From IMG/VR virus record IMGVR_UViG_3300031669_000001, positions 281,070 through 345,069 of that record: DNA of 64,000 nucleotides; one strand, written 5' to 3'. Each line of letters starts with the position of its first letter. Positions within the stretch are counted from its first letter, which is position 1. Shown in pieces: positions 1 to 38,262 of the stretch. The notes beneath the pieces were generated by a model. It was not told the origin of the DNA, did not search any database, and was given only the letters and a program-made list of their open reading frames with translations. The translations under genes and the position numbers were made by a program.

Positions 1-951
1 GATCGTTTCAATCTCAGGCGCTATCTTCTTCTGAAGAAGGTTCAATTGATTTTCATACTCAAGGTCTGTAGCGCCTCGAAGTCCCCTGAAGATAAACTTT
101 GCGCCTGAGTTTGCTGCGTAACTAACGATCAGTTCGTCGGATGGAATGAAGTCGATTGTGACTCTCGCCATTTGTTCAGGTGACAGGACTTCTTGTAACG
201 TGCACTTTACTAGCTGCGATCTCGTCTCATCATCGAAAAGGTATTTCTTAGATGGGTTTGATGCTACAGCGACGATGATATAGTCCACTATATCAAGCGC
301 TCTTTGAATGACCCAGGTGTGTCCCAGTGTAATCGGATCGAATGATCCAGACACTATACCGATCTTCTTTCCCTTCAGCTGCTTCTTACGCATGAGGTCA
401 AGAGCTTTCTTTATCTCCAATTGAAGATAATTTTCTTCATGTATCGCTCTTATTCCATTGTAGATTATCGCATCGCTAACCGCAAATCTATGTTCGTCTG
501 TAGTTTGAGATTCCATGATAGCCAAAATTTGATCTTGTGATCGTCCATCTCTATCACTCACTCGCTGAATCTGTAAGCTAGGGGGAGACACCACTGAGAT
601 TACAAAGTCAAACCTTGAAATCAACGTTGGAGCGTTCTCAACTAATAACGGGAACTCTAGGATAAAGTCATTCCTTTGCATAAGAGTTTCAATCTTCCTA
701 GAGATTATGTCATGAAAGATGAATTCAAGCTCTTTCATCGCTTGCTTATCTGCAAAAACAATATCACGTATCTTTAATCGATCGCTTGTTCCAAATTCCA
801 GCCTTAAAGCGCTGCATATTTCTGGATTATCATACGCATCCCTTACAAATTCATCTATGCTAAAGACGTGATGATTTGGAAGAGCGTCAGCTAACAACTG
901 ACATACTGTTGATTTGCCTGAACCTATCCCACCTGTTACTACGATCTTCAT
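1..951 (-). CDS. coaE-coaD: Dephospho-CoA kinase / phosphopantetheine adenylyltransferase fusion (CoaE-CoaD), runs off the left edge
   Basis: Not in the ORF track; translated by hand from ATG at 951. It reads MKIVVTGGIGSGKST (CoaE P-loop), LEFPLLVE, QIQRVSDRDG, then in frame KIGIVSGSFDPITLGH and FIFRGLR...DLEYE (CoaD motifs). Confidence 0.9.
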   Translation of the reverse strand, partial: MKIVVTGGIGSGKSTVCQLLADALPNHHVFSIDEFVRDAYDNPEICSALRLEFGTSDRLKIRDIVFADKQAMKELEFIFHDIISRKIETLMQRNDFILEFPLLVENAPTLISRFDFVISVVSPPSLQIQRVSDRDGRSQDQILAIMESQTTDEHRFAVSDAIIYNGIRAIHEENYLQLEIKKALDLMRKKQLKGKKIGIVSGSFDPITLGHTWVIQRALDIVDYIIVAVASNPSKKYLFDDETRSQLVKCTLQEVLSPEQMARVTIDFIPSDELIVSYAANSGAKFIFRGLRGATDLEYENQLNLLQKKIAPEIETI

Positions 952-1238
952 GATATTTTTACCTCGAATGAAGTTTTGATTTCAGCTGGTGTTACCTTCA
1001 GCGCCAAAAAGTTCTTGTCACCATAAGTAGCAGATAAACGTTTTTTGATCTCATCTTCCCATTCTTGCTTTTCGGTGTACGCAACGTACTCTAAAAAGTG
1101 TTCTGTTGAAGCTGGATATCCGTGACCTGGAAAGTCAATGCTTCTCTGATCGCCTGGTATCGAGACAGAACGATTCTCGATGATCGCGTAGTGCTCTGTC
1201 TTTGGCACTTCACTTGTGTTATGGCAATATTTTATCAT
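948..1238 (-). CDS. Hypothetical protein
   Basis: 96-aa ORF with ATGA overlaps to its neighbours. Confidence 0.7.
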   Translation of the reverse strand: MIKYCHNTSEVPKTEHYAIIENRSVSIPGDQRSIDFPGHGYPASTEHFLEYVAYTEKQEWEDEIKKRLSATYGDKNFLALKVTPAEIKTSFEVKIS

Positions 1239-1612
1239 GGCTTTTTAGGTGGTGCTTTAATTGGTTTTGGTGTAGGACGATAATCAAAAATTTCATCTTT
1301 CGATGGAACAACTTCACAATCATCAAACCAGAAGCGGCTCAAACATCCTTTCTCGGTTCTCGGCTCCGTCAAGCTAACGTGATCGATGCTCTGGTCTGTA
1401 TATCTTTTTGATGGTGCTGACCAAAGAGATAATTTTCCGTCTTCATCAATGCAACCTGGTGCATATTCCCAATAAGTTTGTCTCCAGATGTATTGACCAT
1501 TGCTAAGCATCGTCCACGGCCACCAGGCGTAATGCTCTACGCCATAAATTTGTTCACGAAGCTCTAGTTGTCTTTCATAATGCTGCTGTTCAGTTGTTTT
1601 ACCAAAGATCAT
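1235..1612 (-). CDS. Hypothetical protein
   Basis: 125-aa ORF, translationally coupled. Confidence 0.7.
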   Translation of the reverse strand: MIFGKTTEQQHYERQLELREQIYGVEHYAWWPWTMLSNGQYIWRQTYWEYAPGCIDEDGKLSLWSAPSKRYTDQSIDHVSLTEPRTEKGCLSRFWFDDCEVVPSKDEIFDYRPTPKPIKAPPKKP

Positions 1613-1947
1613 TTTATTTCCTTTTCTGATTCTTTTGTTTCCTTTTCTGATTCTTCTGTCAATTCTTCAACTGATTCCTGCATCTCTTCGATCGTCTCGT
1701 TGACTTCTTCCATTGAAGATTTCACCTCTGTAAGCTCTACACCTTGGAGATTTACGGTTAACTGCAGGAAAAGCATTTGATAGATCGCCTCTAGCGATAC
1801 TAACGTAGTGAGAACTAACAGGATATGATCACGTCTGGATACGTCAAATAAGAACCACAGCCCCATTCCAGTGAAGAAGATGGTGTGTAGAATGATGGAT
1901 TGAGTGGTGCCGATCCACTGAGTTATCTTTTTTGCTAAAGCTTCCAT
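1609..1947 (-). CDS. DUF1003-like membrane protein
   Basis: Two hydrophobic helices, LTTLVSLEAIY motif, acidic coiled-coil tail. Confidence 0.65.
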   Translation of the reverse strand: MEALAKKITQWIGTTQSIILHTIFFTGMGLWFLFDVSRRDHILLVLTTLVSLEAIYQMLFLQLTVNLQGVELTEVKSSMEEVNETIEEMQESVEELTEESEKETKESEKEIK

Positions 1948-3624: not shown

Positions 3625-5109
3625 TTACGCGTAGGTGGTATCTGCCCGTGCCCAAGACTGTACTTCATCGAAGTCTTGGAAGCGTTTTTGCGCACCATCT
3701 TTTGACCACAATCTCCAGCCAGGACCATCAACGAAGAAGGAAGCTGGGTTGGCAGTGCAATCACGAACCTCCAACTCACCGCTTTCCAGTTCGAAAGGAC
3801 GAACCAAACCACGCAGAGACTTCTTGCCCAGGTCGGTGATTGGTTCTTTAACCAAAGACCTCCAACCGTTTGCATCCATCATCGCGATTGCCTTCATGCT
3901 GAAGCTGAAGTCATCGCGAGCACCTTCGTGGGTAACACCAGCACCCATACCCAAGGTCAGGCTGTCCATGCTGTAACCTTTGCTAGTGAATCCTTCCAGC
4001 ACTGGCTCGATGGTGTTGATGCGGATTCCATCACCTTGGATGACGGCGGTGCAAGGTGCCAAGACCTTGTAACCGGCTGCATTCTTGTGGACACCGAAGG
4101 TATCTTCGATGTCCTTTGCGACCCGCGCCGGCTCAACAGTTGCATCGCCAGAGTCAGGACGCATGACCATCACACCACCACTGTTCTCGATCTCTTCGCG
4201 GAAGGTTTCACCCATGTACTCACGAACGAAGCGGCGAGCATTGTAGGTGTCGATAACGACGCTCAACAGTGGGATGCCTATGCCGCGCTTAGTACGAGCA
4301 ACAACGGCGTGCAGGCGTTTCACTGCCATCTTCGCGGCGCCGAAGTCATCACGCTTGTCAGCGTCGCTGTGCGCGCACATTACGCTGTGCTCAGTAGCTT
4401 CAACGCTTGAGGTGTATGGCTTGTTGGAGAAAACGGTGTTCTTGTTGAACAGAGCTTTGATGTAACTGTTTGCGCGAGTGCAATCGCTACCATCGAACAT
4501 CGCTGCGTGAGCGATACCCGCGATGACAGCAGCTTCATCTGGACTGTCTGCACCACGATCGCCGAAGTTGTGCAGCTTGTAATTCAGCATTCCCATGTTG
4601 GCGCCGGTCTTCTGCATGTACTTGGCGATGATGATGCGAGCTGCGCGGCAGGTACTTGCTACGGTAGACATCTTCCAGACGGTGCATTGAACGACAGTCT
4701 CGACATAAGTAGGCAACCAGGCAAAGAGATCGTGAGTATTGACGATACCCAGCACTGGAGTTTGAGGCTTGACGATACGACCTTCTTCAACTGCCCATAC
4801 TTCCAGCGGCAGCTTGCCGTCCAAATAGTCGACCATGTACTGCCAGTCGGCGCGGTTGAATTCGTATCCTTGTTGGGTGATTTCGATATCAGCTTCATCG
4901 ACCATCCACTGTTCGATGCGCACTGAAGCCAAAAAGTTTGCTACGTAGGTTTGACCCATCGCGACGATCTTATCTGCGTACTTGCTGGGTTTACGTGGAA
5001 CGATAGCTGCGTAAGAACGCAGAGTTCCGTCGGGCAATTCTTGCCAGTGACCAGCTTTGTAGCTGTCGCAGGCCAGAATAAAGTTGAAGCGCTTTATCAT
5101 TTGTAACAT
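3625..5109 (-). CDS. nadV: Nicotinamide phosphoribosyltransferase (NAMPT)
   Basis: DSYKAGH, LHNFGDRG, ATEHSVM, SVVIDTY, RPDSGD, VIQGDGI, GMG motifs. Confidence 0.93.
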   Translation of the reverse strand: MLQMIKRFNFILACDSYKAGHWQELPDGTLRSYAAIVPRKPSKYADKIVAMGQTYVANFLASVRIEQWMVDEADIEITQQGYEFNRADWQYMVDYLDGKLPLEVWAVEEGRIVKPQTPVLGIVNTHDLFAWLPTYVETVVQCTVWKMSTVASTCRAARIIIAKYMQKTGANMGMLNYKLHNFGDRGADSPDEAAVIAGIAHAAMFDGSDCTRANSYIKALFNKNTVFSNKPYTSSVEATEHSVMCAHSDADKRDDFGAAKMAVKRLHAVVARTKRGIGIPLLSVVIDTYNARRFVREYMGETFREEIENSGGVMVMRPDSGDATVEPARVAKDIEDTFGVHKNAAGYKVLAPCTAVIQGDGIRINTIEPVLEGFTSKGYSMDSLTLGMGAGVTHEGARDDFSFSMKAIAMMDANGWRSLVKEPITDLGKKSLRGLVRPFELESGELEVRDCTANPASFFVDGPGWRLWSKDGAQKRFQDFDEVQSWARADTTYA

Positions 5110-7186: not shown

Positions 7187-8344
7187 TCATAATTTCCCCA
7201 GCATGTACTCGATGATGAAGTAGTGATCTTCGAAGAACATCTCAGGGCTCTTCATCACTTCATCCAATGGAACCCACCAGGCCTTCTCAGCATCATCGTC
7301 ACCCTTAACCTTCGGCAGCGATATCTTGCCGTCTACTACGAAGTCAGGCAGCTTAAACAAAAATCCCTTGGTGACAGTGCGACCGCGTAAGGAACGTTCA
7401 GGATAATCGAAGTCTTCTTTGAAGATCATCGAGCTGCGCAGAATCGGTTCAGGAACCTTGATGCGAGTCTCTTCACGCAGTTCACGGATTGCAGCTTCAA
7501 ACAATCGTTCTTTGGGGTTCAAGAAGCCTCCAGGCAGCGCCCACAAACCTTTTCCAGGACGGCTACGACGTTTAACCAGCAGCACGTGACCAGTTTGGAT
7601 GACGATTGAATCAACCGTCTGGAAGATTGGTTCGTAGCGAAGACCGGGATCATTTTGACCATAAGTTCCAGGATCACGTGGTATGTTCGGTTTACGATAC
7701 TCGATGTTGAAGAGATGCTCTTCACGCAGGTTGTCGTAGAATGGAGTCTCTTCGAAAGCGCGAAGCTCATTAATCGTTTCAGCTGGCAAGAATGCGTTCA
7801 ATAACAATTCTGCGTGGTTAGCGGTGATCTCGTTGCCATCGAATGAACGGCCAAAGTAGATTTCACGGACTGCGGTGGCGGTCAAGAAGCGACTGACTTC
7901 CATATTTTCATCGACCATGTCAGCGATGAAGTTAGGAAAGTACTTCAAGTAGAACGTTGAGGAATCACGATCAGCACCAGTGATTCTGATCTCAATGTCT
8001 TTGGGATTGAGTTTGACTTGCTCAGCGCTATCAACGAACTCGTTGATCACCTTGTTAACGTTTGCTATCCAAAGTTGATCATTGTAGGGGAAGTCTCGAA
8101 TGCCACGCACTGATACCGGTGCATTTTTAGCGTGTGGAGTCCAAGGACGAGATGCCCACTTATCAATGACGCTTGCACGTTCTTCAAACGTCCAGGGATT
8201 TTTGGGATTTCTTGCTTGATTGATGGAACCGATGAGGACCAGCACAGCGTCCGAGCGCTCACGTGCTCGCTTCAGAACTTCTGCATGTCCATTGTGGAAT
8301 GGGGAAAATCGACCGATGTACACGGTCAGTACAAACTTAGCCAT
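7187..8344 (-). CDS. nadM: Bifunctional NMN adenylyltransferase / Nudix ADP-ribose hydrolase
   Basis: IGRFSPFHNGH, KNPWTFEER; Nudix box ALPGGFLNPKERLFEAAIRELREET; FFEDH. Confidence 0.93.
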   Translation of the reverse strand: MAKFVLTVYIGRFSPFHNGHAEVLKRARERSDAVLVLIGSINQARNPKNPWTFEERASVIDKWASRPWTPHAKNAPVSVRGIRDFPYNDQLWIANVNKVINEFVDSAEQVKLNPKDIEIRITGADRDSSTFYLKYFPNFIADMVDENMEVSRFLTATAVREIYFGRSFDGNEITANHAELLLNAFLPAETINELRAFEETPFYDNLREEHLFNIEYRKPNIPRDPGTYGQNDPGLRYEPIFQTVDSIVIQTGHVLLVKRRSRPGKGLWALPGGFLNPKERLFEAAIRELREETRIKVPEPILRSSMIFKEDFDYPERSLRGRTVTKGFLFKLPDFVVDGKISLPKVKGDDDAEKAWWVPLDEVMKSPEMFFEDHYFIIEYMLGKL

Positions 8345-13997: not shown

Positions 13998-18230
<4,233 letters not shown>

Positions 18231-25123: not shown

Positions 25124-25499
25124 TGTAATCTTTCTTATGGATTTAGTTATTCCAACTTCGTGGATTTACTCAACCGAGAGAATTTGCTGCTAGGTGAGCT
25201 GGAGGTGATGCGTTAAATCAGATGGTGTAATTGTGCTTTTGCTATCATGTCAGAGATAACTTTTTCACCTTTGAATACTTTCTTTAAAAGCTCGTCAGCT
25301 TCGTGATGTTCACGAGTAGCGATCAAATATGCATGATAGACAGCTAAAGTGTCAAAGCAAGATGGTCTTAGGATCTGTGCGGTCTTAGTATTGACTAATG
25401 CTTTTTCTTCTAGGTTAATCTTGATGTGACACATTCCAATTATTCTCATATTTGCTGACGAAATGCAATTGTTGAATTTCATTTCGTCAGCACGCTGGC

Positions 25500-25860
25500 G
25501 AACCAACGTGCTAGTTGTTAGATTTCTTTAATAAGGTAGAAAGCTTTCACCCTCTATTCTAAACCTCAGGCAACAATTAAGCTGCCAGAGCCAGAGCTCC
25601 GTTTGCGTCGTTTGCATTTACATGCTTGTCAGATTTACGGTCTGTACTCACCGAGTTGTAAAATTAAGGTACGTCCCTACTCAATCGAAACCAGGTACAC
25701 CCCCATTAGGGGGCACTAGTTACTTTGATCCGACCTGGGTTCAGGTGTTAATGCGAATCAGGGAGCTCTAGTGCTCGGTGGAGGTGGGGAGAATCGAACT
25801 CCCGTCTTGCGCAGCTTTCGCTTTTTCCTTTCAGCAGTTTCCTGCCATACAACCATCTTT
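25500..25860 (-). ncRNA. ssrA: Circularly permuted (two-piece) tmRNA; outer ends approximate
   Basis: Acceptor piece ends GACGGGAGTTCGATTCTCCCCACCTCCACC at 25777. Coding piece starts GGGGGTGTACCTGGTTTCGA at 25704. G3:U70 pair present; tag ANDANGALALAA-stop at 25615-25577. Confidence 0.9.
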
Positions 25861-26126
25861 ACTACTTGAATCCATTATAACAAATTGATACATGAAAGTA
25901 CATTATTTATTTGCGGGCTTTTGATTCCAATAGATAGTTGCGAGCGTGAGAAGAACACCCACACCCATTCCTAGGAAAAAAGCTGTGGAGTAGCACAGCA
26001 CATACTCTAAAATGATTTCCACGTTAAGCTCCAGCGATCAGAATAGCAAATATTACGAATGCAATGAAGAAATGACCTGTCACCAGGAATAGGAGCGCTA
26101 GGACTGCTAGGATCTGGACAGTATTT

Positions 26127-26681
26127 CTACTCATTTGTTTCTCCATAAAGTGTGTTAGGTAAACCTTTGCGTTGAAGCTTTGCACGAGAACGAGCAATCA
26201 ACGTTTCTGCTGTCGTTGGGTCCTTAACATCTCCAATAGTAATTGGTTTTACAGTCAAAACTTTCTTGACTTTCCTGTCCATGGATCCAACGATTCTTTG
26301 TTGCTTGTGTTTCAGCAGAGTTACCTCTCTGCATCGTCTAACTACGCTCTTGAGCTCGCCTATCAGAACGTTAGACATCAAGTTAATAGAAAGAGCGTCA
26401 GGCATCTCACAGCCGCCGCTACCAATGTACATCTCTTCGCGAAGCAGATTATCGGCGGTGTCTTCGATGTCGAGGCGCAGCTTACTCGATATGAAGTTGA
26501 GAGTTTTTACGCTCAACATTCCAGCCTCAGCTGCGCGGACAGCGTCGGCCATGATTGCTTGGACGCTATGAATCTTCACTGAAAGCTTTCTCGTGTACTT
26601 TGGATCATTGAGAAAGTTCAATCTGTCTGCTAGGTAGATCGCAGCTGGTGTCTTACCAAAGGTGTGCTTATCTAGATTCAT
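26127..26681 (-). CDS. Hypothetical protein
   Basis: 184-aa ORF in a coupled operon. Confidence 0.7.
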   Translation of the reverse strand: MNLDKHTFGKTPAAIYLADRLNFLNDPKYTRKLSVKIHSVQAIMADAVRAAEAGMLSVKTLNFISSKLRLDIEDTADNLLREEMYIGSGGCEMPDALSINLMSNVLIGELKSVVRRCREVTLLKHKQQRIVGSMDRKVKKVLTVKPITIGDVKDPTTAETLIARSRAKLQRKGLPNTLYGETNE

Positions 26682-26986
26682 TTTACTTGTGCCGTAAATT
26701 TTTGTGCTTTTGTTTGGAGTTCCTGAGCAAATGCATTTTGATTCATTCCAGCTATCTCAATGTGTAGCTCACATTTAGCGCCTGTTTCTGCATCAAGAAC
26801 TTCGTCGACGCTGTGGATTCTTCCTTCATTTTTCTCAACAAACAAGAAGTAGCTAAACAGCATCTCTAAAAATTCATCCTTCTTGCTACCAAGCACGCTG
26901 AATACGATGACAAGATCGTTTGCCTTTGGTGCAGGCTTCATCAAAGTTAACTTGATGAATTTTTCCTCATCATTTTTCCAGCTCAT
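26678..26986 (-). CDS. Hypothetical protein
   Basis: 102-aa ORF, ATGA overlaps. Confidence 0.7.
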   Translation of the reverse strand: MSWKNDEEKFIKLTLMKPAPKANDLVIVFSVLGSKKDEFLEMLFSYFLFVEKNEGRIHSVDEVLDAETGAKCELHIEIAGMNQNAFAQELQTKAQKFTAQVK

Positions 26987-27744
26987 TTCTTTCCCTTTAT
27001 AGGCTTTGGTATCGTTACTTTACGAACAGGTTTCACTTTACGCTGTGATCTAAAGGCGCTAGCTATAGTATCAGATGAGCTCCTTACTGGTGAACCTGTT
27101 GAGCTGTATTGTTCACCAGTTTCCAAGTCAACTATCACGTATTTTCCTGGACAATCAGTCGTGATTATGATGTCGACTTCATGATCTAACCCCTCGATGA
27201 CATTACCAGTCAAGAGCTTCCGCTGTAAACCTCCGCTAGCTTTGAGAGCTGATCTTGACGCTTGTACGCCTTCAAGCATCGTGTCAATCTGTGTTTTGTT
27301 ACAAACTTCTTCTGTGATAAGCCTGCGAAGCTTCGTTGAATCCATAGCTTTAACGAACGTTTCTGGCAAATCAGCTGGGCCAGATGCTACATATCGTCCA
27401 GAGGCGGTGATCGTTGGCTGATTATTCACCTTGATCTTACCTAGAACATCGAGAGCCTTTTTAAGTGCAAGCTCTTTCGTTATAACTTCACGAACCTCAA
27501 CCTTCACTTTACACGCTGTGTTGAAGAGCTTGGTAACCCTGATGCGAAGCTCTTTCATAAGATCTGTGTTCTGGTAGTTCACAGAATATTTGTAGCTTGG
27601 ATTTACAGAAAATTGTGCAGACTTAAAAGCCGGCCAAAAATCAATGGTGGATAGCTTTCCCGATGTCATTTGCTTGTACATGTTGTCAGCAACTTGCTGT
27701 AGTTCGTTTTCTGTCCACTTAAACTTATGCGCAGTCTTCGTCAT
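26983..27744 (-). CDS. Hypothetical basic protein
   Basis: 253-aa ORF. Confidence 0.7.
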   Translation of the reverse strand: MTKTAHKFKWTENELQQVADNMYKQMTSGKLSTIDFWPAFKSAQFSVNPSYKYSVNYQNTDLMKELRIRVTKLFNTACKVKVEVREVITKELALKKALDVLGKIKVNNQPTITASGRYVASGPADLPETFVKAMDSTKLRRLITEEVCNKTQIDTMLEGVQASRSALKASGGLQRKLLTGNVIEGLDHEVDIIITTDCPGKYVIVDLETGEQYSSTGSPVRSSSDTIASAFRSQRKVKPVRKVTIPKPIKGKK

Positions 27745-28075
27745 CTTCTTTTTCTCCGGGAGTTAAAAAGTTGTTCCAGCAAAGTTTCATTTCTTCGTTA
27801 AACTCTAACGTTTCGACGTTGAATGGGATTATCTCTAGAGTCTCCAAATCAAGTCTATCAAACCTAATACCCATCAACTCAGCAGCGTAAACAGGAATAG
27901 GTCCATCAAAGATTCCATTATGTTCAGGAACGAAGTCGATTTGGCACTTATCACACCAAAGATGCTTCGCGTATTCTGACCACTGTGTGTTCTCATTACC
28001 ACACTTACAAGGTGCTATGTCATACTTTCTTGGTGGCTGAACGTAGCACCAAGTTCGCTTAATCAGCTCTGCCAT
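27725..28075 (-). CDS. Hypothetical Zn-ribbon protein
   Basis: CKCG ... WCDKC. Confidence 0.65.
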   Translation of the reverse strand: MAELIKRTWCYVQPPRKYDIAPCKCGNENTQWSEYAKHLWCDKCQIDFVPEHNGIFDGPIPVYAAELMGIRFDRLDLETLEIIPFNVETLEFNEEMKLCWNNFLTPGEKEDDEDCA

Positions 28076-28512
28076 GTGGCGATGACGTCTTTCGCGATGC
28101 GCGCAGCGAGTCCGCCGTCATAACGACCCTCGTATTTGAACTTTAGAATCTTGAGCATCTCACCCATTGGCTTATTGGCAACGTCGAAGCCATTCACCTT
28201 GACGATGTCGATCAGAATTTCACGAATCTTTTCTTCGGTGAGTTGTGCAGGCAGGAAAGAATTGATCAGCTCTTTTTCAGTCGTAGCATCAACGAAGCGC
28301 TCATCACCTTCTGCAAGTAGAGGAAGAATTTGATCGAGGTTCTTGATGAACTTCTTTATCACGGCAATTGTTTCTGCATCGGTCGTTTCGCGACCTTCGT
28401 TCTTACCAACCATAGTTGCTTCAGAAAGAAGTGTGATCAGAGAAGCTGCCTTCTTGGATTCGCGATTTTTGCGCGCTGTGATAGACGCGGCTTTAATGTC
28501 ATCGAGAATCAT
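28063..28512 (-). CDS. yqeY: GatB/YqeY domain protein
   Basis: ARKNRE...LITLLSE, FLPAQLTEE, MGEMLKILK...GRYDG. Confidence 0.85.
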   Translation of the reverse strand: MILDDIKAASITARKNRESKKAASLITLLSEATMVGKNEGRETTDAETIAVIKKFIKNLDQILPLLAEGDERFVDATTEKELINSFLPAQLTEEKIREILIDIVKVNGFDVANKPMGEMLKILKFKYEGRYDGGLAARIAKDVIATWQS

Positions 28513-29749: not shown

Positions 29750-30142
29750 TTACAGCAACTTAAGGTGCCCAGTTATCGCGTTAATCTTATCATTCTCTGC
29801 AGGACCAACAGAAATGCATGTATTGGTTGGAACTCCACTGAATTCTGTTAACCCACTATCAGTGATCAGCGAGCAGGTTATTCCAGCAGCTTTAGCCTTC
29901 TCTAATAGTTCAAGAAGCTCGGCTTCACTGTTAACACCGCAACAGATCTTCTTGAACACTCCTTTCATGAGCCACTCATCCATCTCAGGCGTAAGTGGGA
30001 TCATGAGGTAACGTGCTCCTCCATTGGCAACAAAAACACTTCCACTATCAACAACGGGTTTCATAGAAGCGTGAGAACCTTGGGCTACCATCTTACCCTT
30101 GCGCATGTTGAGGTCGGTCCTCATTACAATGACCTGTTTCAT
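29750..30142 (-). CDS. pth2: Peptidyl-tRNA hydrolase, Pth2 family
   Basis: KQVIVMRTDLNMRKGKMVAQGSHA, DSGLTEF, GP...ITGHLKLL. Confidence 0.93.
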   Translation of the reverse strand: MKQVIVMRTDLNMRKGKMVAQGSHASMKPVVDSGSVFVANGGARYLMIPLTPEMDEWLMKGVFKKICCGVNSEAELLELLEKAKAAGITCSLITDSGLTEFSGVPTNTCISVGPAENDKINAITGHLKLL

Positions 30143-33673: not shown

Positions 33674-34107
33674 GTGGCCAGAGGTGGTCATCCTCTGGAT
33701 GTTGCGATCTATGGGTTAGGTCTGACGAAACCTCTAAGACTCTTCTCGCGGCCCTAGTTACGTCCTGCCCCTAGCTTTGACGTTATCTTGGCATTTCCCC
33801 GGCGGGAACGGAACAACTACTGGATCTAATCCTTCACGAGTTATGCGAGTAGTACGCAATACCGTATATCGTTGCCGTGATCCACGACGGAGGTACAGTC
33901 ATCGGCTCCTCAGGTATGTCTTTGATGATGTTGCCAAGCTCGCTCTTGTACCGCCGTTCGGCCTTGAAAACGAAACCTATAGCTCAATCAAACAACACTA
34001 AGCATCCTGAACTACTACAACACTAGATTAAAGAGTGAATCTGCAGATTCGCTGCCCGACACAGTAACATCAGGGGCTGTACCGAGCAATCTTCAAACAT
34101 CATGTTA

Positions 34108-34576: not shown

Positions 34577-34654
34577 TGGTGCGAGTGGAGGGATTCGAAC
34601 CCACACTGTACGACTTCTAAAGCCGTTGCCTCCTACCAATTGCGCTACACTCGC
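34577..34654 (-). tRNA. tRNA-Leu(TAG), short variable arm
   Basis: ACGGC-TTTAGAA-GTCGT; ACCA. Confidence 0.88.
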
Positions 34655-34744
34655 GGCAGAGAATACCAGAATCGAACTGGAAGCCCTCGCGGGCTCACAT
34701 CGCTTTCCAAGCGAGCCTTGTCGACCAGACAAGGATTATTCTCT
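34655..34744 (-). tRNA. tRNA-Ser(GGA), 8/4 fold
   Basis: AGAGAATA/TATTCTCT acceptor, CCAG/CTGG T-stem, 7-bp D-stem, loop TTGGAAA; ends G-CC abutting the next tRNA. Confidence 0.8.
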
Positions 34745-34766
34745 ATTTGTTGTTCCTTAGTAAGCA

Positions 34767-34853: not shown

Positions 34854-34937
34854 TGGTGCCGCCGAAGGGATTCGAACCCTCAATGGCCGAAGCTCTCAAC
34901 CTCGTAACTGTGCCAGATTTGTATTAGCCACAGCGGC
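34854..34937 (-). tRNA. tRNA-Leu(GAG), short variable arm, enlarged D-loop
   Basis: CGAGG-TTGAGAG-CTTCG; ACCA. Confidence 0.8.
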
Positions 34938-34938
34938 A

Positions 34939-35562
34939 TTATTTGTTGCTTCTAATACTTTCCACCGTTCCCGGTGACATGTCTCTCATCTGAACTGCTA
35001 ACGCTTTCAACCTCTTGAAAGATGTTGGTAAGCAGTTGTCAGGAACATCTCCAGCCTGTTCAACGATCAGAGCAGCCATCTCACCAAATAGTAACACAGG
35101 CAGGTGAGTCTTACGCATCATGTCATCATGCTTCGCTCCGTCGATCAAAACTCCATTCGCGTGAGTTACGATCTCGTTGCTTATCATTCTGAACAGTTCA
35201 ATAACCTTCGAGCTGTCCCTCGTTGAATGTGTTACGATGCAGGTCCTACCTTCTTTTGGACTGTTAGGCCCAAACATAGGGTGAATTCCTGTAACGTGAT
35301 CACTGTGCGTTAAACAGATCTCGTTAGATCTCCGCTGAACTGAACAAACGTTGATTAGGTGCTTTCCAACGTGCCTTACTGCAACTTCATCAAATGCAGA
35401 GATCGGAACTGCTAGGATGATAAAATCGGCGTCATCTTCATCTACGATCTTGGCGTGTGATTCCAATTCCCTCTTCAAGAATGAACCAAACACTCCCATA
35501 CCAACTATGGCGATCTTCATCTCTGTTGGTGGTGCAGCCGAAAATGGACCTGTATCGTTCAT
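34939..35562 (-). CDS. tyrA: Prephenate dehydrogenase-like protein
   Basis: KIAIVGMGVFG, IILAVP, NVCSVQ, GIHPMFGP, HDDMM; SD GAGGTG before 35562. Confidence 0.82.
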   Translation of the reverse strand: MNDTGPFSAAPPTEMKIAIVGMGVFGSFLKRELESHAKIVDEDDADFIILAVPISAFDEVAVRHVGKHLINVCSVQRRSNEICLTHSDHVTGIHPMFGPNSPKEGRTCIVTHSTRDSSKVIELFRMISNEIVTHANGVLIDGAKHDDMMRKTHLPVLLFGEMAALIVEQAGDVPDNCLPTSFKRLKALAVQMRDMSPGTVESIRSNK

Positions 35563-35585
35563 GATGCACCTCTGGTTATAAAAAT

Positions 35586-35660
35586 TGGCGGGCCTGCAGG
35601 GAATCGAACCCCGCTGTTCGGTTTTGGAGACCGACATAATAGCCGATATATGACAAGCCC
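35586..35660 (-). tRNA. tRNA-Trp(CCA)
   Basis: TCGGT-CTCCAAA-ACCGA; GCCA. Confidence 0.85.
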
Positions 35661-35774
35661 GGTCCGAGGAGCGGGGTTCGAACCCGCATGCCATAGGCGG
35701 GAGATTTTGAGAAACATTCACGTTAGTAAATGTTTGAAAAAGTCTCCTGAGTATACCAGTTTCTCCACCCTCGG
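35661..35774 (-). tRNA. tRNA-Leu(CAA) with ~31-nt insertion/intron in the anticodon loop
   Basis: GGAGA-CT[TTTTCAAACATTTACTAACGTGAATGTTTCT]CAAAA-TCTCC; otherwise a canonical class II body. Confidence 0.75.
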
Positions 35775-35800: not shown

Positions 35801-36523
35801 TCAAATTCCAATAGCAAATTTCAAATCTTCACAATCTATCAATCTAATCTTTCCAGAAATAAATTTGGAATAATTTCCAATATTCTTTTCATCTCTAATC
35901 AAATAAATTTTGATATCTGGATGATCTTTAAAAACTTTTTGATATTTTACAATATCTCTTTGTGATAACCAACCTTTGACTTCAATAAAAACATTTTCAA
36001 AAATAGAGAAATCTGGCGTATAAATTTTATGATCCCCATATTTGATTCTTGGCCGAGATATCGAATAACCTAATTCTAAAAGTTTTAATCCTACATTGTA
36101 CTCCCATGTTCCTTGAACTTTAATTCCACCAACTTCAAACCATTTAATATGCGGAGAAGTTTCTAGATATTTAATTCTAGCTTCTGAGATTTTTCTTTTT
36201 GCATCTTCAGAAAGATTAAATCTTCTTCCTAGATTACCTTTACTTATTTTTCTTCTTGTCTCTTCGTGATTTGAAACAATTTCTTCTAATTTCTTTCCCT
36301 TAAATTTGCTAAGTTTGCCTTTGAATCCTGATGGTTCTGGGATTTTGCCATCTCTATGAATTAAACACCATCTATAATGAGAATTTAACGATTGAGAATT
36401 TAAGAATTCCCGTCCACAATCACATTTTAATTCAAACAATAAATTATGAACAATCCTACGATGTTTATTCAAATTTCCATTTGATGAAAATTTTTTATTG
36501 CAATCTTTACATTTTAGATCCAT
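35801..36523 (-). CDS. Zn-finger plus PD-(D/E)xK putative homing endonuclease
   Basis: C2H2 fingers, NUMOD3-like segment, YTPDF..IEVKGW; AT-rich; TATAAATA at 36529-36536. Confidence 0.8.
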   Translation of the reverse strand: MDLKCKDCNKKFSSNGNLNKHRRIVHNLLFELKCDCGREFLNSQSLNSHYRWCLIHRDGKIPEPSGFKGKLSKFKGKKLEEIVSNHEETRRKISKGNLGRRFNLSEDAKRKISEARIKYLETSPHIKWFEVGGIKVQGTWEYNVGLKLLELGYSISRPRIKYGDHKIYTPDFSIFENVFIEVKGWLSQRDIVKYQKVFKDHPDIKIYLIRDEKNIGNYSKFISGKIRLIDCEDLKFAIGI

Positions 36524-36648: not shown

Positions 36649-36655
36649 TTACTTC

Positions 36656-36739
36656 TGGTACCCTCGACCGGATTCGAACCGGTAAAAACTCTAGATTTTA
36701 AATCTAGCGGCTGTGCCAATTTACCTAAGTCACGAGGGC
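36656..36739 (-). tRNA. tRNA-Leu(TAA), short variable arm, enlarged D-loop
   Basis: CTAGA-TTTAAAA-TCTAG; ACCA. Confidence 0.82.
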
Positions 36740-37159: not shown

Positions 37160-37249
37160 TGGTGGATCACGGACGGAATCGAACCTCATGCCCAGAGGGA
37201 GAAGCTTTACAGGCTTCCGACAGCACCAGCAGTCCTTATTACGCGATCC
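37160..37249 (-). tRNA. tRNA-Tyr(GTA), atypical D-arm
   Basis: GAAGC-CTGTAAA-GCTTC; TAATAAG linker then GACTGC-TGGT-GCTGTC. Confidence 0.78.
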
Positions 37250-37254
37250 ATGTT

Positions 37255-37860
37255 CTAAATCAATTTCAATTCTTTTAGCTTCTTTTTATCCCAGAACTCA
37301 AATTTCACATCAGGATATTTCATTTGCCATTCTTCAAACTTTTCTTTATTAGCTGGTCTCCAATAACCTTTCACTTCAATAATTGTTCCATCTTCTAGAA
37401 CAAAATCTGGTCTGTAAGATCGTTTTCCGTCTAACTTGAAAACAACTTCTCCGTACTTCCAACTAATATCTTGTTCATCAAGATATTTTGCAACTTTTAC
37501 TTCCCAGCTAGAATCCATTCTAATGTTCTTGTAAAGAGATTGTCTATCTCCTCGATGATTTCCGTTCTTATTTCCAATCATCTTTTTTGCAATCTTTTCA
37601 CACGTTGTAAGCGAATGGCTTTTATTCTTGAAAGCTGCGTCATGATCTAGTAGATGACGTTTTACTCCTTCTGAAATATTGCCTATTCTTGGGTCTGTAA
37701 ATTTATTCAATCCTTTAGACCATCCACGATTTAAGAAAATTTTATCGCGAAATTCTTTACTCTTTGGATTTTCTAAGCACCATCTTGTATGATTTGCTTT
37801 CTTCGACTTATCCGCCGAGCTAAATTCAAATTCATTGCTGCAAAATTTACATTTCCACAT
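37255..37860 (-). CDS. Zn-finger plus PD-(D/E)xK putative homing endonuclease
   Basis: CKFC..NHTRWC; DSSWE, YRPDF, IIEVKGY; CATAAATA upstream. Confidence 0.8.
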   Translation of the reverse strand: MWKCKFCSNEFEFSSADKSKKANHTRWCLENPKSKEFRDKIFLNRGWSKGLNKFTDPRIGNISEGVKRHLLDHDAAFKNKSHSLTTCEKIAKKMIGNKNGNHRGDRQSLYKNIRMDSSWEVKVAKYLDEQDISWKYGEVVFKLDGKRSYRPDFVLEDGTIIEVKGYWRPANKEKFEEWQMKYPDVKFEFWDKKKLKELKLI

Positions 37861-38184: not shown

Positions 38185-38262
38185 TGGTACCCACGATCGG
38201 ATTCGAACCGACACTGTGTAGTTTTTGAAACTACTGCCTCCTACCAATTGCGCTACGTGGGC
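38185..38262 (-). tRNA. tRNA-Leu(CAA), short variable arm
   Basis: GTAGT-TTCAAAA-ACTAC; ACCA. Confidence 0.88.

What the first reader, a model, noticed from the sequence alone, without database searches (positions are those of the whole stretch)
35661..35774. tRNA-Leu(CAA) with a miniature hairpin intron
Seen: ~31 nt forming AAACATTTAC-TAAC-GTGAATGTTT interrupt the anticodon loop, and removal restores CT-CAA-AA. Known: this is far too short for the group I introns of bacterial tRNAs. Inference: it needs protein-catalysed cutting and ligation, and could be a tRNA activated only when a nuclease cuts it.
Basis: partly seen in the sequence, partly recalled or inferred. Interest (0 to 1): 0.6.

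Follow-up and report, generated by a model that had tools for sequence, protein, structure and literature searches.

The report
Phage tRNA hairpin mini-intron family
A jumbo phage's leucine tRNA gene is split by a 31-base hairpin belonging to a previously undescribed, phage-only family of tiny tRNA introns; RNA data suggest precise removal, implying tRNA splicing in a bacterial virus without a self-splicing ribozyme.

Summary
Window 35661-35774 (minus strand) is a type II tRNA-Leu gene in a 345-kb jumbo phage, interrupted by 31 nt (35709-35739) that form a 10-bp hairpin.

- **Anticodon.** A metatranscriptome contig, 100% identical to the phage, skips exactly these 31 nt. The resulting loop is CUU|AAAA, so the anticodon is UAA, not CAA. 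The insert lies between U34 and A35. Intron-less relatives carry the same CUUAAAA loop.
- **Family.** I found 18 further distinct phage tRNA genes with 28-36-nt inserts: 14 Leu-UAA, one Leu-UAG, two CAU and one Trp. The inserts have a 9-12 bp (mostly 10-bp) stem. In the 15 with 10-bp stems, 149 of 150 pair positions can pair, with extensive covariation and a conserved U·G at pair 8. All intron-bearing genes keep intact cloverleaves.
- **Distribution.** The same pattern gave 13 of 13 true hits in viral contigs and 0 of 14 in 185,579 prokaryotic genomes.
- **What it is not.** It is not a group I intron, and it lacks the archaeal bulge-helix-bulge (BHB) geometry. The phage has no EndA or RtcB.
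- **Enzymes present.** The phage encodes a T4-type Rnl1 ligase, a kinase and a phosphatase. Homing-endonuclease genes often flank the introns.

The most likely mechanism is cutting by an unknown nuclease followed by Rnl1 sealing. Splicing rests on one contig, and no paper describing this was found.

The parts
35661..35774 (-). Interrupted type II tRNA-Leu(UAA) gene (114 nt; 83 nt after removal of the insert). It ends in ACC and directly abuts the next tRNA.
   Evidence: ARAGORN with introns allowed; fold; 7/7 acceptor and 5/5 T-stem pairs, A73, long variable arm; 62 of 86 aligned columns identical to intron-less tRNA-Leu(UAA) of phage RsoM2USA.
35740..35774 (-). 5' exon (tRNA positions 1-34), ending ...GGAGA-CUU.
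   Evidence: The 14 loose letters of the RNA contig equal window 35740-35753.
35709..35739 (-). 31-nt mini-intron UUUC-AAACAUUUAC-UAAC-GUGAAUGUUU-CUC, lying between U34 and A35.
   Evidence: Skipped in RNA run X2 contig 11, present in DNA run X1 at depth 190 with no joint. Homologous introns at the same site in 14 other Leu-UAA genes.
35726..35735 (-). 5' arm of the 10-bp intron hairpin. U at 35728 forms the family-conserved U·G wobble with G at 35719.
35722..35725 (-). Tetraloop UAAC, the commonest loop in the family.
35712..35721 (-). 3' arm of the intron hairpin.
35661..35708 (-). 3' exon (AAAA-UCUCC ... ACC).
   Evidence: RNA contig matches 35081-35708 at 100% identity.
35586..35660 (-). 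tRNA-Trp(CCA), abutting and on the same RNA contig. Its counterpart in related phage contig L002 carries a 28-nt hairpin insert of the same family.
35801..36523 (-). P0002: two C2H2 zinc fingers plus a T7-endonuclease-I-like PD-(D/E)XK domain. Putative free-standing homing endonuclease, ending 27 nt upstream of the interrupted tRNA.
   Evidence: Pfam, PDB and PHROG matches. Absent from a relative about 90% identical that still keeps the intron (X4 joint 35768->36573).
37255..37860 (-). P0003: paralogous endonuclease-I-like putative homing endonuclease inside the tRNA cluster.

Best explanation
The gene encodes tRNA-Leu(UAA). It is interrupted between U34 and A35 by a member of a phage-specific family of 28-36-nt hairpin mini-introns. 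Family features are a 4-5-nt 5' tail ending in C, a stem of about 10 bp with a U·G wobble at pair 8, a loop that is often UAAC or GAAA, and a 3-nt 3' tail.

Proposed mechanism:
1. The insert is transcribed with the tRNA cluster.
2. An unidentified endonuclease cuts the RNA at both junctions. It probably reads the hairpin together with the anticodon arm.
3. The tRNA halves stay held together by the anticodon stem.
4. The phage's T4-type RNA repair set joins them: a P-loop kinase and a HAD phosphatase if the ends need healing, and Rnl1 for sealing. This restores the loop CUUAAAA.

At the DNA level the insert probably persists and spreads because it disrupts the anticodon-loop target of free-standing homing endonucleases that populate phage tRNA clusters. 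Known parallels are collaborative homing and the T4 gene 60 insert.

Shown: the insert, its family, its covariation, its restriction to phages, intact tRNA bodies, one RNA contig with the exact junction, and the presence of Rnl1, kinase and phosphatase.

Inferred: that removal happens in RNA, that a protein nuclease does the cutting, that Rnl1 does the joining, and the role in immunity to homing endonucleases.
For: **Exact junction in RNA.** X2 contig 11 (642 nt) matches 35081-35708 at 100% identity and continues with window 35740-35753. DNA run X1 (depth 190) shows only the unspliced form and no joint. X2 coverage is patchy, 0 to 275x, as expected of RNA. The junction has no microhomology, which argues against a reverse-transcriptase jump.

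**Persistence.** A relative about 90% identical (X4) keeps a 31-nt insert. A 100%-identical intron-less DNA strain is therefore less likely than splicing.

**Family.**
- 14 other distinct Leu-UAA genes, one Leu-UAG and two CAU genes carry inserts at N34|A35, plus one Trp gene.
- In the 15 introns with 10-bp stems, 149 of 150 stem cells pair. Shuffling the 3' arms gives 96.7 ± 5.4, and 0 of 2000 shuffles reach the observed value. U·G at pair 8 occurs in 13 of 15.
- Own versus L029 shows three double compensatory changes.

**Genes remain functional.** Intron-bearing genes keep 7/7 acceptor and 5/5 T-stem pairs, with covariation between genes.

**Phage-only.** 13 of 13 true hits in viral contigs versus 0 of 14 in 185,579 genomes.

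**Enzymes.**
- Rnl1 scores 84-86 bits, and an adjacent AAA_33 kinase and NT5C/HAD phosphatase are present.
- Rnl1 occurs in 5 of 15 intron-bearing records (4.2 genome equivalents) versus 1 of 49 intron-less controls (17.4 equivalents), Fisher p = 0.002.

**Homing endonuclease genes next to introns.** P0002 in this phage; GIY-YIG genes at L029, L041 and L039; a relative of a NUMOD3-motif protein encoded in this window, at G013.

**Presence/absence polymorphism.** PA5oct tRNA-Leu is 91% identical to the L036 exons but has no intron.
Against: - Splicing rests on a single low-depth (about 4x) assembled contig with only 14 nt beyond the junction. No raw reads were available, and an intron-less strain in that sample is not excluded.
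- No nuclease candidate was found. EndA, RtcB and Tpt1 are absent, and a 2H-phosphoesterase hit is marginal.
- The two cuts follow no known enzyme's geometry. The Trp insert cannot lie at 34/35.
- The Rnl1 association is confounded by lineage, because the control phages share few genes with this phage.
- The phage also has an uninterrupted type I-like tRNA with anticodon UAA (36655-36737), so the interrupted gene need not be essential.
- Homing endonuclease genes are common in phage tRNA clusters anyway.
Confidence: 0.6

Rival explanations
1. The insert is never removed from RNA. The gene is a disabled or decoy tRNA, or a DNA-level element. The joined contig comes from an intron-less strain, or from DNA in the RNA library.
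For: Only one contig at depth about 4 shows the junction. Intron-less alleles do exist among relatives. A second tRNA with anticodon UAA is present.
Against: - Across at least 19 genes the tRNA bodies stay intact with compensatory changes.
- The hairpin covaries with G·U pairs that work only on the sense RNA strand.
- A 90%-diverged relative keeps the insert, whereas the joined contig is 100% identical to this phage.
- DNA at depth 190 shows no joint.
Confidence: 0.13
2. RNA-catalysed removal. The hairpin, with its conserved U·G, the C before the stem and the flanking loop, forms a very small self-cleaving or self-splicing motif, possibly with a ligase only for sealing.
For: Conserved nucleotides go beyond what pairing requires: U·G in 13 of 15, and C in the 5' tail next to the stem in every intron at 34/35. 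No nuclease was found. A kinase/phosphatase/ligase set fits the cyclic-phosphate ends that ribozymes leave.
Against: 31 nt is smaller than any known self-cleaving class. There is no Rfam match, no terminal G as in group I, and the flank sequences differ between subtypes.
Confidence: 0.1
3. Archaeal/eukaryal-type splicing: an EndA-like enzyme recognises a bulge-helix-bulge (BHB) motif and gives tRNA-Leu(CAA). This is the reading of the first reader and of ARAGORN.
For: In this gene alone, CUU / UUUC:AAAA / CUC can be drawn as 3-nt bulge, 4-bp helix, 3-nt bulge. Cuts after the second bulge base would give CU|CAAAA (my reading).
Against: - The bulges lie 5' of the central helix on both strands, the opposite handedness to BHB as defined in PMC4090602.
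- The helix is not conserved in other family members.
- The observed junction is UAA.
- PF01974 and PF01139 are absent.
Confidence: 0.03
4. Defence-triggered activation. The tRNA matures only after a host anticodon nuclease cuts it and the phage repair enzymes reseal it.
For: The phage has a T4-like repair kit, and T4 Rnl1/Pnkp counter anticodon nucleases (established knowledge).
Against: Two precise cuts are needed. Host nucleases vary, whereas the intron family spans many phage lineages. No data link it to defence.
Confidence: 0.05

Closest known systems
Group I intron of cyanobacterial and plastid tRNA-Leu(UAA)
   Same: Same gene type and, from established knowledge, the same insertion point between U34 and A35 of the anticodon. 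It occurs in the bacterial world and is linked to homing endonucleases.
   Different: Those introns are over 200 nt, self-splicing ribozymes with a P3-P8 core and a terminal G. Here the insert is 31 nt with one hairpin, has no Rfam match and ends in C.
Archaeal and eukaryal protein-spliced tRNA introns (BHB motif, EndA/TSEN plus RtcB or Trl1)
   Same: A short intron in the anticodon loop, presumably removed by two endonuclease cuts and a ligase. Rnl1 with a kinase resembles the fungal Trl1 heal-and-seal logic.
   Different: There is no BHB geometry. The position is 34/35, not 37/38. The phage has no EndA or RtcB, and the host is bacterial (PMC4090602).
T4 Pnkp/Rnl1 anticodon-loop repair
   Same: The phage encodes an Rnl1-family ligase and a kinase/phosphatase. 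The substrate would be two tRNA halves held by the anticodon stem with a break in the 7-nt loop.
   Different: T4 repairs a single defensive cut. Here two programmed cuts would excise 31 nt. The kinase and phosphatase are separate genes.
Collaborative homing (free-standing endonuclease plus ORF-less intron) and the T4 gene 60 bypass insert with MobA
   Same: A small non-coding insert in a conserved gene next to a free-standing homing endonuclease gene, with presence/absence polymorphism (PMC3984707).
   Different: The insert is neither a ribozyme nor a ribosomal bypass. Cleavage of the intron-less allele by P0002 is untested.

Membership tests
Bacterial type II tRNA-Leu | Cloverleaf with long variable arm, A73, and a 7-nt anticodon loop once the insert is removed | tested here: met
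   7/7 acceptor pairs, 5/5 T-stem pairs, variable arm CGCCUAUGGCAU, A73, loop CUUAAAA.
Group I intron | Conserved catalytic core (P3-P8), typically over 200 nt | tested here: not met
   31 nt with a single hairpin. No Rfam hit, even at E <= 10.
Group I intron | Terminal guanosine at the intron 3' end | tested here: not met
   The intron ends in C. Other family members end in A, C, G or U.
Group I intron | Self-splicing in vitro | not testable with these tools
   Needs transcription and splicing assays.
BHB (archaeal/eukaryal) tRNA intron | Two 3-nt bulges separated by a 4-bp helix at the splice sites | tested here: not met
   The only drawable version has the bulges on the wrong side of the helix and is not conserved in the family (definition from PMC4090602).
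BHB (archaeal/eukaryal) tRNA intron | EndA/TSEN endonuclease available | tested here: not met
   PF01974 has no match in the complete phage genome. The host genome is unknown.
BHB (archaeal/eukaryal) tRNA intron | RtcB or Trl1-type ligase | tested here: inconclusive
   RtcB is absent and Tpt1 is absent. An Rnl1-family ligase, to which the Trl1 ligase domain belongs, is present.
T4-type heal-and-seal RNA repair | Rnl1-family ligase | tested here: met
   PF09511 at 84-86 bits, 408-aa ORF, weak match to T4_Rnl1_C.
T4-type heal-and-seal RNA repair | Polynucleotide 5'-kinase / 3'-phosphatase | tested here: inconclusive
   Adjacent AAA_33 kinase (55.7 bits) and NT5C/HAD phosphatase (37.9 bits) as separate genes. 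Their specificity is unknown.
Homing-endonuclease-associated insert (collaborative homing type) | Free-standing endonuclease gene next to the insert | tested here: met
   P0002 ends 27 nt upstream. GIY-YIG genes, or a relative of a NUMOD3-motif protein, lie next to four other introns.
Homing-endonuclease-associated insert (collaborative homing type) | The endonuclease cuts the insert-less allele at the insertion site | not testable with these tools
   Needs a cleavage assay.

The most novel reading that the evidence does not exclude
Jumbo phages carry a mobile family of hairpin mini-introns at tRNA position 34/35. A dedicated, still unknown phage (or universal bacterial) endonuclease together with Rnl1 splices them. 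This would be the first enzymatic, non-ribozyme tRNA splicing pathway in the bacterial world, and it would give phage Rnl1/Pnkp-type enzymes a routine job beyond repairing defence damage.
Probability: 0.45. Interest if true: 0.92.

Novelty: categorically new. Interest (0 to 1): 0.86.

Why it matters
Textbook knowledge holds that bacterial and phage tRNA introns are self-splicing group I ribozymes, and that protein-dependent tRNA splicing belongs to archaea and eukaryotes (PMC4090602).

A conserved, covarying, phage-only family of roughly 30-nt introns would change this in four ways:
- It adds a third kind of tRNA intron.
- It predicts a new RNA endonuclease.
- It offers a routine substrate for the widespread phage Rnl1 and kinase/phosphatase genes.
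- It suggests that conflict with homing endonucleases can drive intron gain in tRNA genes.

Practically, standard tRNA finders miss or mislabel these genes. ARAGORN called them Phe-AAA, Arg-UCU, Pyl, Stop and Ile-AAU, so phage tRNA repertoires and apparent suppressor tRNAs are being misannotated.

Tried and rejected
- **BHB model.** Wrong handedness and not conserved in the family.
- **RNase III-type cut with 2-nt 3' overhang.** It fits only the Trp insert, not the Leu introns (reasoning).
- **Repeated or mobile palindrome within the genome.** The hairpin is unique.
- **Splicing enzymes in the phage.** EndA, RtcB and Tpt1 are absent, and a 2H-phosphoesterase hit is marginal at 14.6 bits.
- **P0002 and P0003 as splicing nucleases.** Their zinc fingers plus endonuclease I domain point to DNA. 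Other introns are flanked by unrelated endonuclease families, and G001 with the Trp intron has no P0002 homologue.
- **Abundant RNA at 33703-34089 as a trans-acting ribozyme.** It shows no notable fold and has no Rfam hit.
- **P0001 (prephenate-dehydrogenase-like) as an anchor for relatives.** Its homologues are mostly bacterial.
- **Conserved neighbour gene, and presence/absence profiling for a nuclease.** Only homing endonucleases and lineage markers emerged, because the control phages are too unrelated.
- **Cultured phages.** None carries the intron.
- **Further family members.** Intron-allowing ARAGORN runs over 728 kb of DNA around intron-less tRNA-Leu genes (80 loci), and over 1.14 Mb of seven control genomes, found none.
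- **Literature.** Eight searches found no description.

Full report
**Context.** The window is the last 64 kb of a 345,069-bp IMG/VR virus record with direct terminal repeats, rated 100% complete. The genome carries about 54 tRNA genes and a permuted tmRNA. By Rnl1 similarity its nearest cultured relative is the 344-kb Ralstonia jumbo phage RsoM2USA, at 41% identity. The finding lies in a minus-strand tRNA cluster rich in Leu, Ser, Tyr and Trp genes.

**The observation.** On the minus strand, 35774..35661 reads as follows:
- acceptor stem CCGAGGG/UCCUCGG
- a 3-bp D stem
- anticodon stem GGAGA/UCUCC
- variable arm CGCCUAUGGCAU
- T arm GCGGG-UUCGAAC-CCCGC
- discriminator A73, then CC

Between the two strands of the anticodon stem lie 38 nt instead of 7.

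ARAGORN finds the gene only when introns are allowed. Default ARAGORN and Rfam miss it. The 10-bp hairpin AAACAUUUAC/GUGAAUGUUU with loop UAAC appears in the minimum-energy fold, with z = -3.41 for the whole gene. It occurs nowhere else in the genome.

**Which 31 nt are removed.** The sequence allows two readings. Removing UUUC...CUC gives CUUAAAA and anticodon UAA. Three lines of evidence favour UAA:
1. In soil metatranscriptome run X2, a 642-nt contig matches 35081-35708 without a mismatch. It then continues with AAGTCTCCTGAGTA, which is window 35740-35753. This joins GGAGACUU to AAAAUCUCC.
2. The closest intron-less relatives have the loop CUUAAAA and covarying stems. They are in RsoM2USA (62 of 86 aligned columns identical) and in the related contig L002.
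3. In every other family member only the UAA-type reading restores a normal loop.

The intron is therefore 35709-35739, between U34 and A35.

**Is it spliced in RNA?** Evidence for splicing:
- The junction has no flanking microhomology, so a reverse-transcriptase jump is unlikely. It also recreates exactly the loop seen in the intron-less relatives.
- X2 coverage of the locus runs from 0 to 275x. One contig begins at an adapter, which marks a defined RNA end. This pattern is RNA-like.
- DNA run X1, the probable source at depth 190, shows only the uninterrupted insert and no joint.
- A lake-water relative about 90% identical (X4) keeps an insert of the same length, so the insert predates that divergence. 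The joined contig, by contrast, is 100% identical to this phage.

Caveats are that this is one contig at depth about 4, with 14 nt beyond the junction. The data are Logan contigs, not raw reads. An intron-less strain in that sample cannot be excluded.

**A family, not a one-off.**
- A metagenome scan anchored on this anticodon stem found three more interrupted tRNA-Leu(UAA) genes: L026, L027 and L029.
- A looser pattern with a free anticodon stem returned 13 loci in IMG/VR. All 13 are tRNA-Leu(UAA) genes with complementary anticodon stems and a 31-36-nt insert at U34|A35.
- The same pattern in one genome from each of 185,579 prokaryotic species gave 14 hits, none of them real.
- Scanning whole fragments added a tRNA-Leu(UAG) in G004 and two tRNA(CAU) genes in G007 and G013, all interrupted at N34|A35.
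- L002 has a 28-nt insert in the counterpart of this window's neighbouring tRNA-Trp, at 35/36 to 37/38.
- A further 728 kb of phage DNA around those intron-less tRNA-Leu genes held no other member.

**Architecture**.
- In the 18 introns at 34/35 the 5' tail is 4-5 nt. It always has a C within one nucleotide of the stem, at intron position 4 in all but one.
- The stem is 10 bp in nearly all.
- The loop is 3-8 nt, most often UAAC or a GNRA-like loop.
- The 3' tail is 3 nt, or 4 nt in two cases.
- Flank motifs define three subtypes: YUUC...CUN (this gene), CUACG...AAA and UURCA...GAY. Each subtype occurs on different tRNA backbones and, for all three, in different tRNA species, which suggests mobility.
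- Among 15 introns with 10-bp stems, 149 of 150 cells pair. Shuffling the 3' arms gives 96.7 ± 5.4, and 0 of 2000 shuffles reach 149.
- Eight of the ten stem positions show three or more pair types.
- Pair 8 is U·G in 13 of 15.
- Own versus L029 differ by three double compensatory changes.
- The G·U pairs mean the structure is selected on the sense RNA strand.
- Intron-bearing genes keep perfect acceptor and T stems that covary between genes. They are therefore under tRNA-type selection.

**What it is not.**
- *Group I intron:* the insert is too small, lacks a core, ends in C and has no Rfam match. From general knowledge, U34|A35 of tRNA-Leu(UAA) is also the site of the classic cyanobacterial and plastid group I intron.
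- *BHB intron:* in this gene one can draw CUU / UUUC:AAAA / CUC. However, both bulges lie 5' of the central helix, opposite to the BHB defined in PMC4090602. The helix is not conserved in other members, and canonical cuts would give CAA, contrary to the data.
- *Known splicing enzymes:* PF01974 (EndA), PF01139 (RtcB) and PF01885 (Tpt1) are absent.

**Enzymes that could finish the job.** Outside the window the phage encodes:
- a 408-aa Rnl1-family ligase (PF09511, 84-86 bits)
- two PF09414 RNA ligases
- an AAA_33 kinase next to an NT5C/HAD phosphatase

Homologues of the kinase or the phosphatase lie within a few kb of Rnl1 in two other intron-bearing fragments.

Rnl1 is found in 5 of 15 intron-bearing records, which amount to 4.2 genome equivalents. 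This is consistent with nearly every carrier genome having it. Among 49 intron-less controls (17.4 equivalents) it is found in 1, giving Fisher p = 0.002. The controls share few genes with this phage, so lineage is a confounder.

No nuclease candidate emerged from neighbourhood or profile comparisons.

**DNA-level biology.** P0002 has two C2H2 zinc fingers and a T7-endonuclease-I-like domain. It ends 27 nt upstream of the tRNA, and P0003 is a paralogue. The X4 relative lacks P0002 but keeps the intron. Other introns are flanked by different endonuclease-like genes:
- GIY-YIG (SegE-like) genes lie next to L029, 0.5 kb from L041 and 2.2 kb from L039.
- A gene related to a NUMOD3-motif protein of this window lies 240 nt from the G013 tRNA(CAU).
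- PA5oct-type cultured phages have a tRNA-Leu 91% identical to the L036 exons but without an intron.

This matches the logic of collaborative homing (PMC3984707) and of the T4 gene 60 insert: a small insert breaks an endonuclease target and travels with it. This role is inferred, not shown.

**Mechanism proposed.**
1. The cluster is transcribed. The RNA contig runs from the joined tRNA through tRNA-Trp into the next ORF.
2. A nuclease recognising the hairpin and anticodon arm makes two cuts, at U34|U and C|A35.
3. The ends are healed if needed, and Rnl1 seals them.

My estimates are about 0.75 that the insert is removed in RNA, and about 0.45 that the route is a protein nuclease plus Rnl1.

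**Literature.** Eight full-text searches found no description of such introns. Reviews state that bacterial tRNA introns are group I (PMC4090602, PMC3984707).

**Verdict.** The feature belongs to a new, phage-restricted class of tRNA mini-introns whose splicing machinery is unknown.

Noticed in passing
window 33703-34089: RNA run X2 has a 387-nt contig at depth 275, against about 4 elsewhere, with an adapter at 33703 marking a defined RNA end. There is no minus-strand ORF, no Rfam hit and no unusual fold (z = 0.36). It is an abundant RNA of unknown nature.
   Followed up: partly
window 38185-38262, 34577-34654, 36655-36737 (minus strand): Three tRNAs with Leu anticodons (CAA, UAG, UAA) but short variable arms, that is, type I bodies. 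The UAA one is missed by ARAGORN. Their amino-acid identity is unclear.
   Followed up: partly
G000 229500-229592 and 231918-232011 (outside the window): A 93-nt tRNA(UUU) and a 94-nt tRNA(GUU) with long variable arms, that is, type II-like bodies carrying Lys and Asn anticodons.
   Followed up: no
G000 202917-202992 and 201885-202901 (outside the window): A suppressor tRNA(CUA) lies next to a 338-aa protein with a C-terminal Macro domain. Homologues occur in 4 of 9 intron-bearing fragments and in 0 of 7 controls.
   Followed up: partly
window 34657-34745, 34857-34937, 37165-37248 (minus strand): tRNA-like genes below the Rfam thresholds and missed by ARAGORN: anticodon GGA; GAG with a 21-nt D-arm region; and GUA.
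   Followed up: no
window 25486-25868, 28063-28512, 29750-30142, 3625-5109, 7187-8344: A translation and NAD module: permuted tmRNA, a YqeY-like protein, peptidyl-tRNA hydrolase PTH2, NAMPT and NMNAT-NUDIX.
   Followed up: no
L062 6780-7490 and 8132-8728 (G008): The Rnl1 homologue of another intron-bearing phage is split into two ORFs about 640 nt apart, possibly by an intron or an endonuclease insertion.
   Followed up: no
window 240-1928 and 25974-27245: With no limit on intron length, ARAGORN calls tRNAs with 1.2-1.6-kb 'introns'. These are most likely false positives.
   Followed up: no
L113 3375-3495, L132 9357-9480, L179 10195-10315: Three unrelated phage contigs share a homologous tRNA-like gene with an insert of about 45 nt, of a different kind, in the anticodon/variable region.
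   Followed up: no
L063 17996-18115, L064 16648-16768, G008 14843-14962, G012 36198-36318: ARAGORN labels family members as Phe(AAA), Arg(UCU), Pyl(CUA) and Stop(UUA) because it picks the wrong intron boundaries. This is a source of false suppressor or odd tRNA calls in phage annotation.
   Followed up: yes
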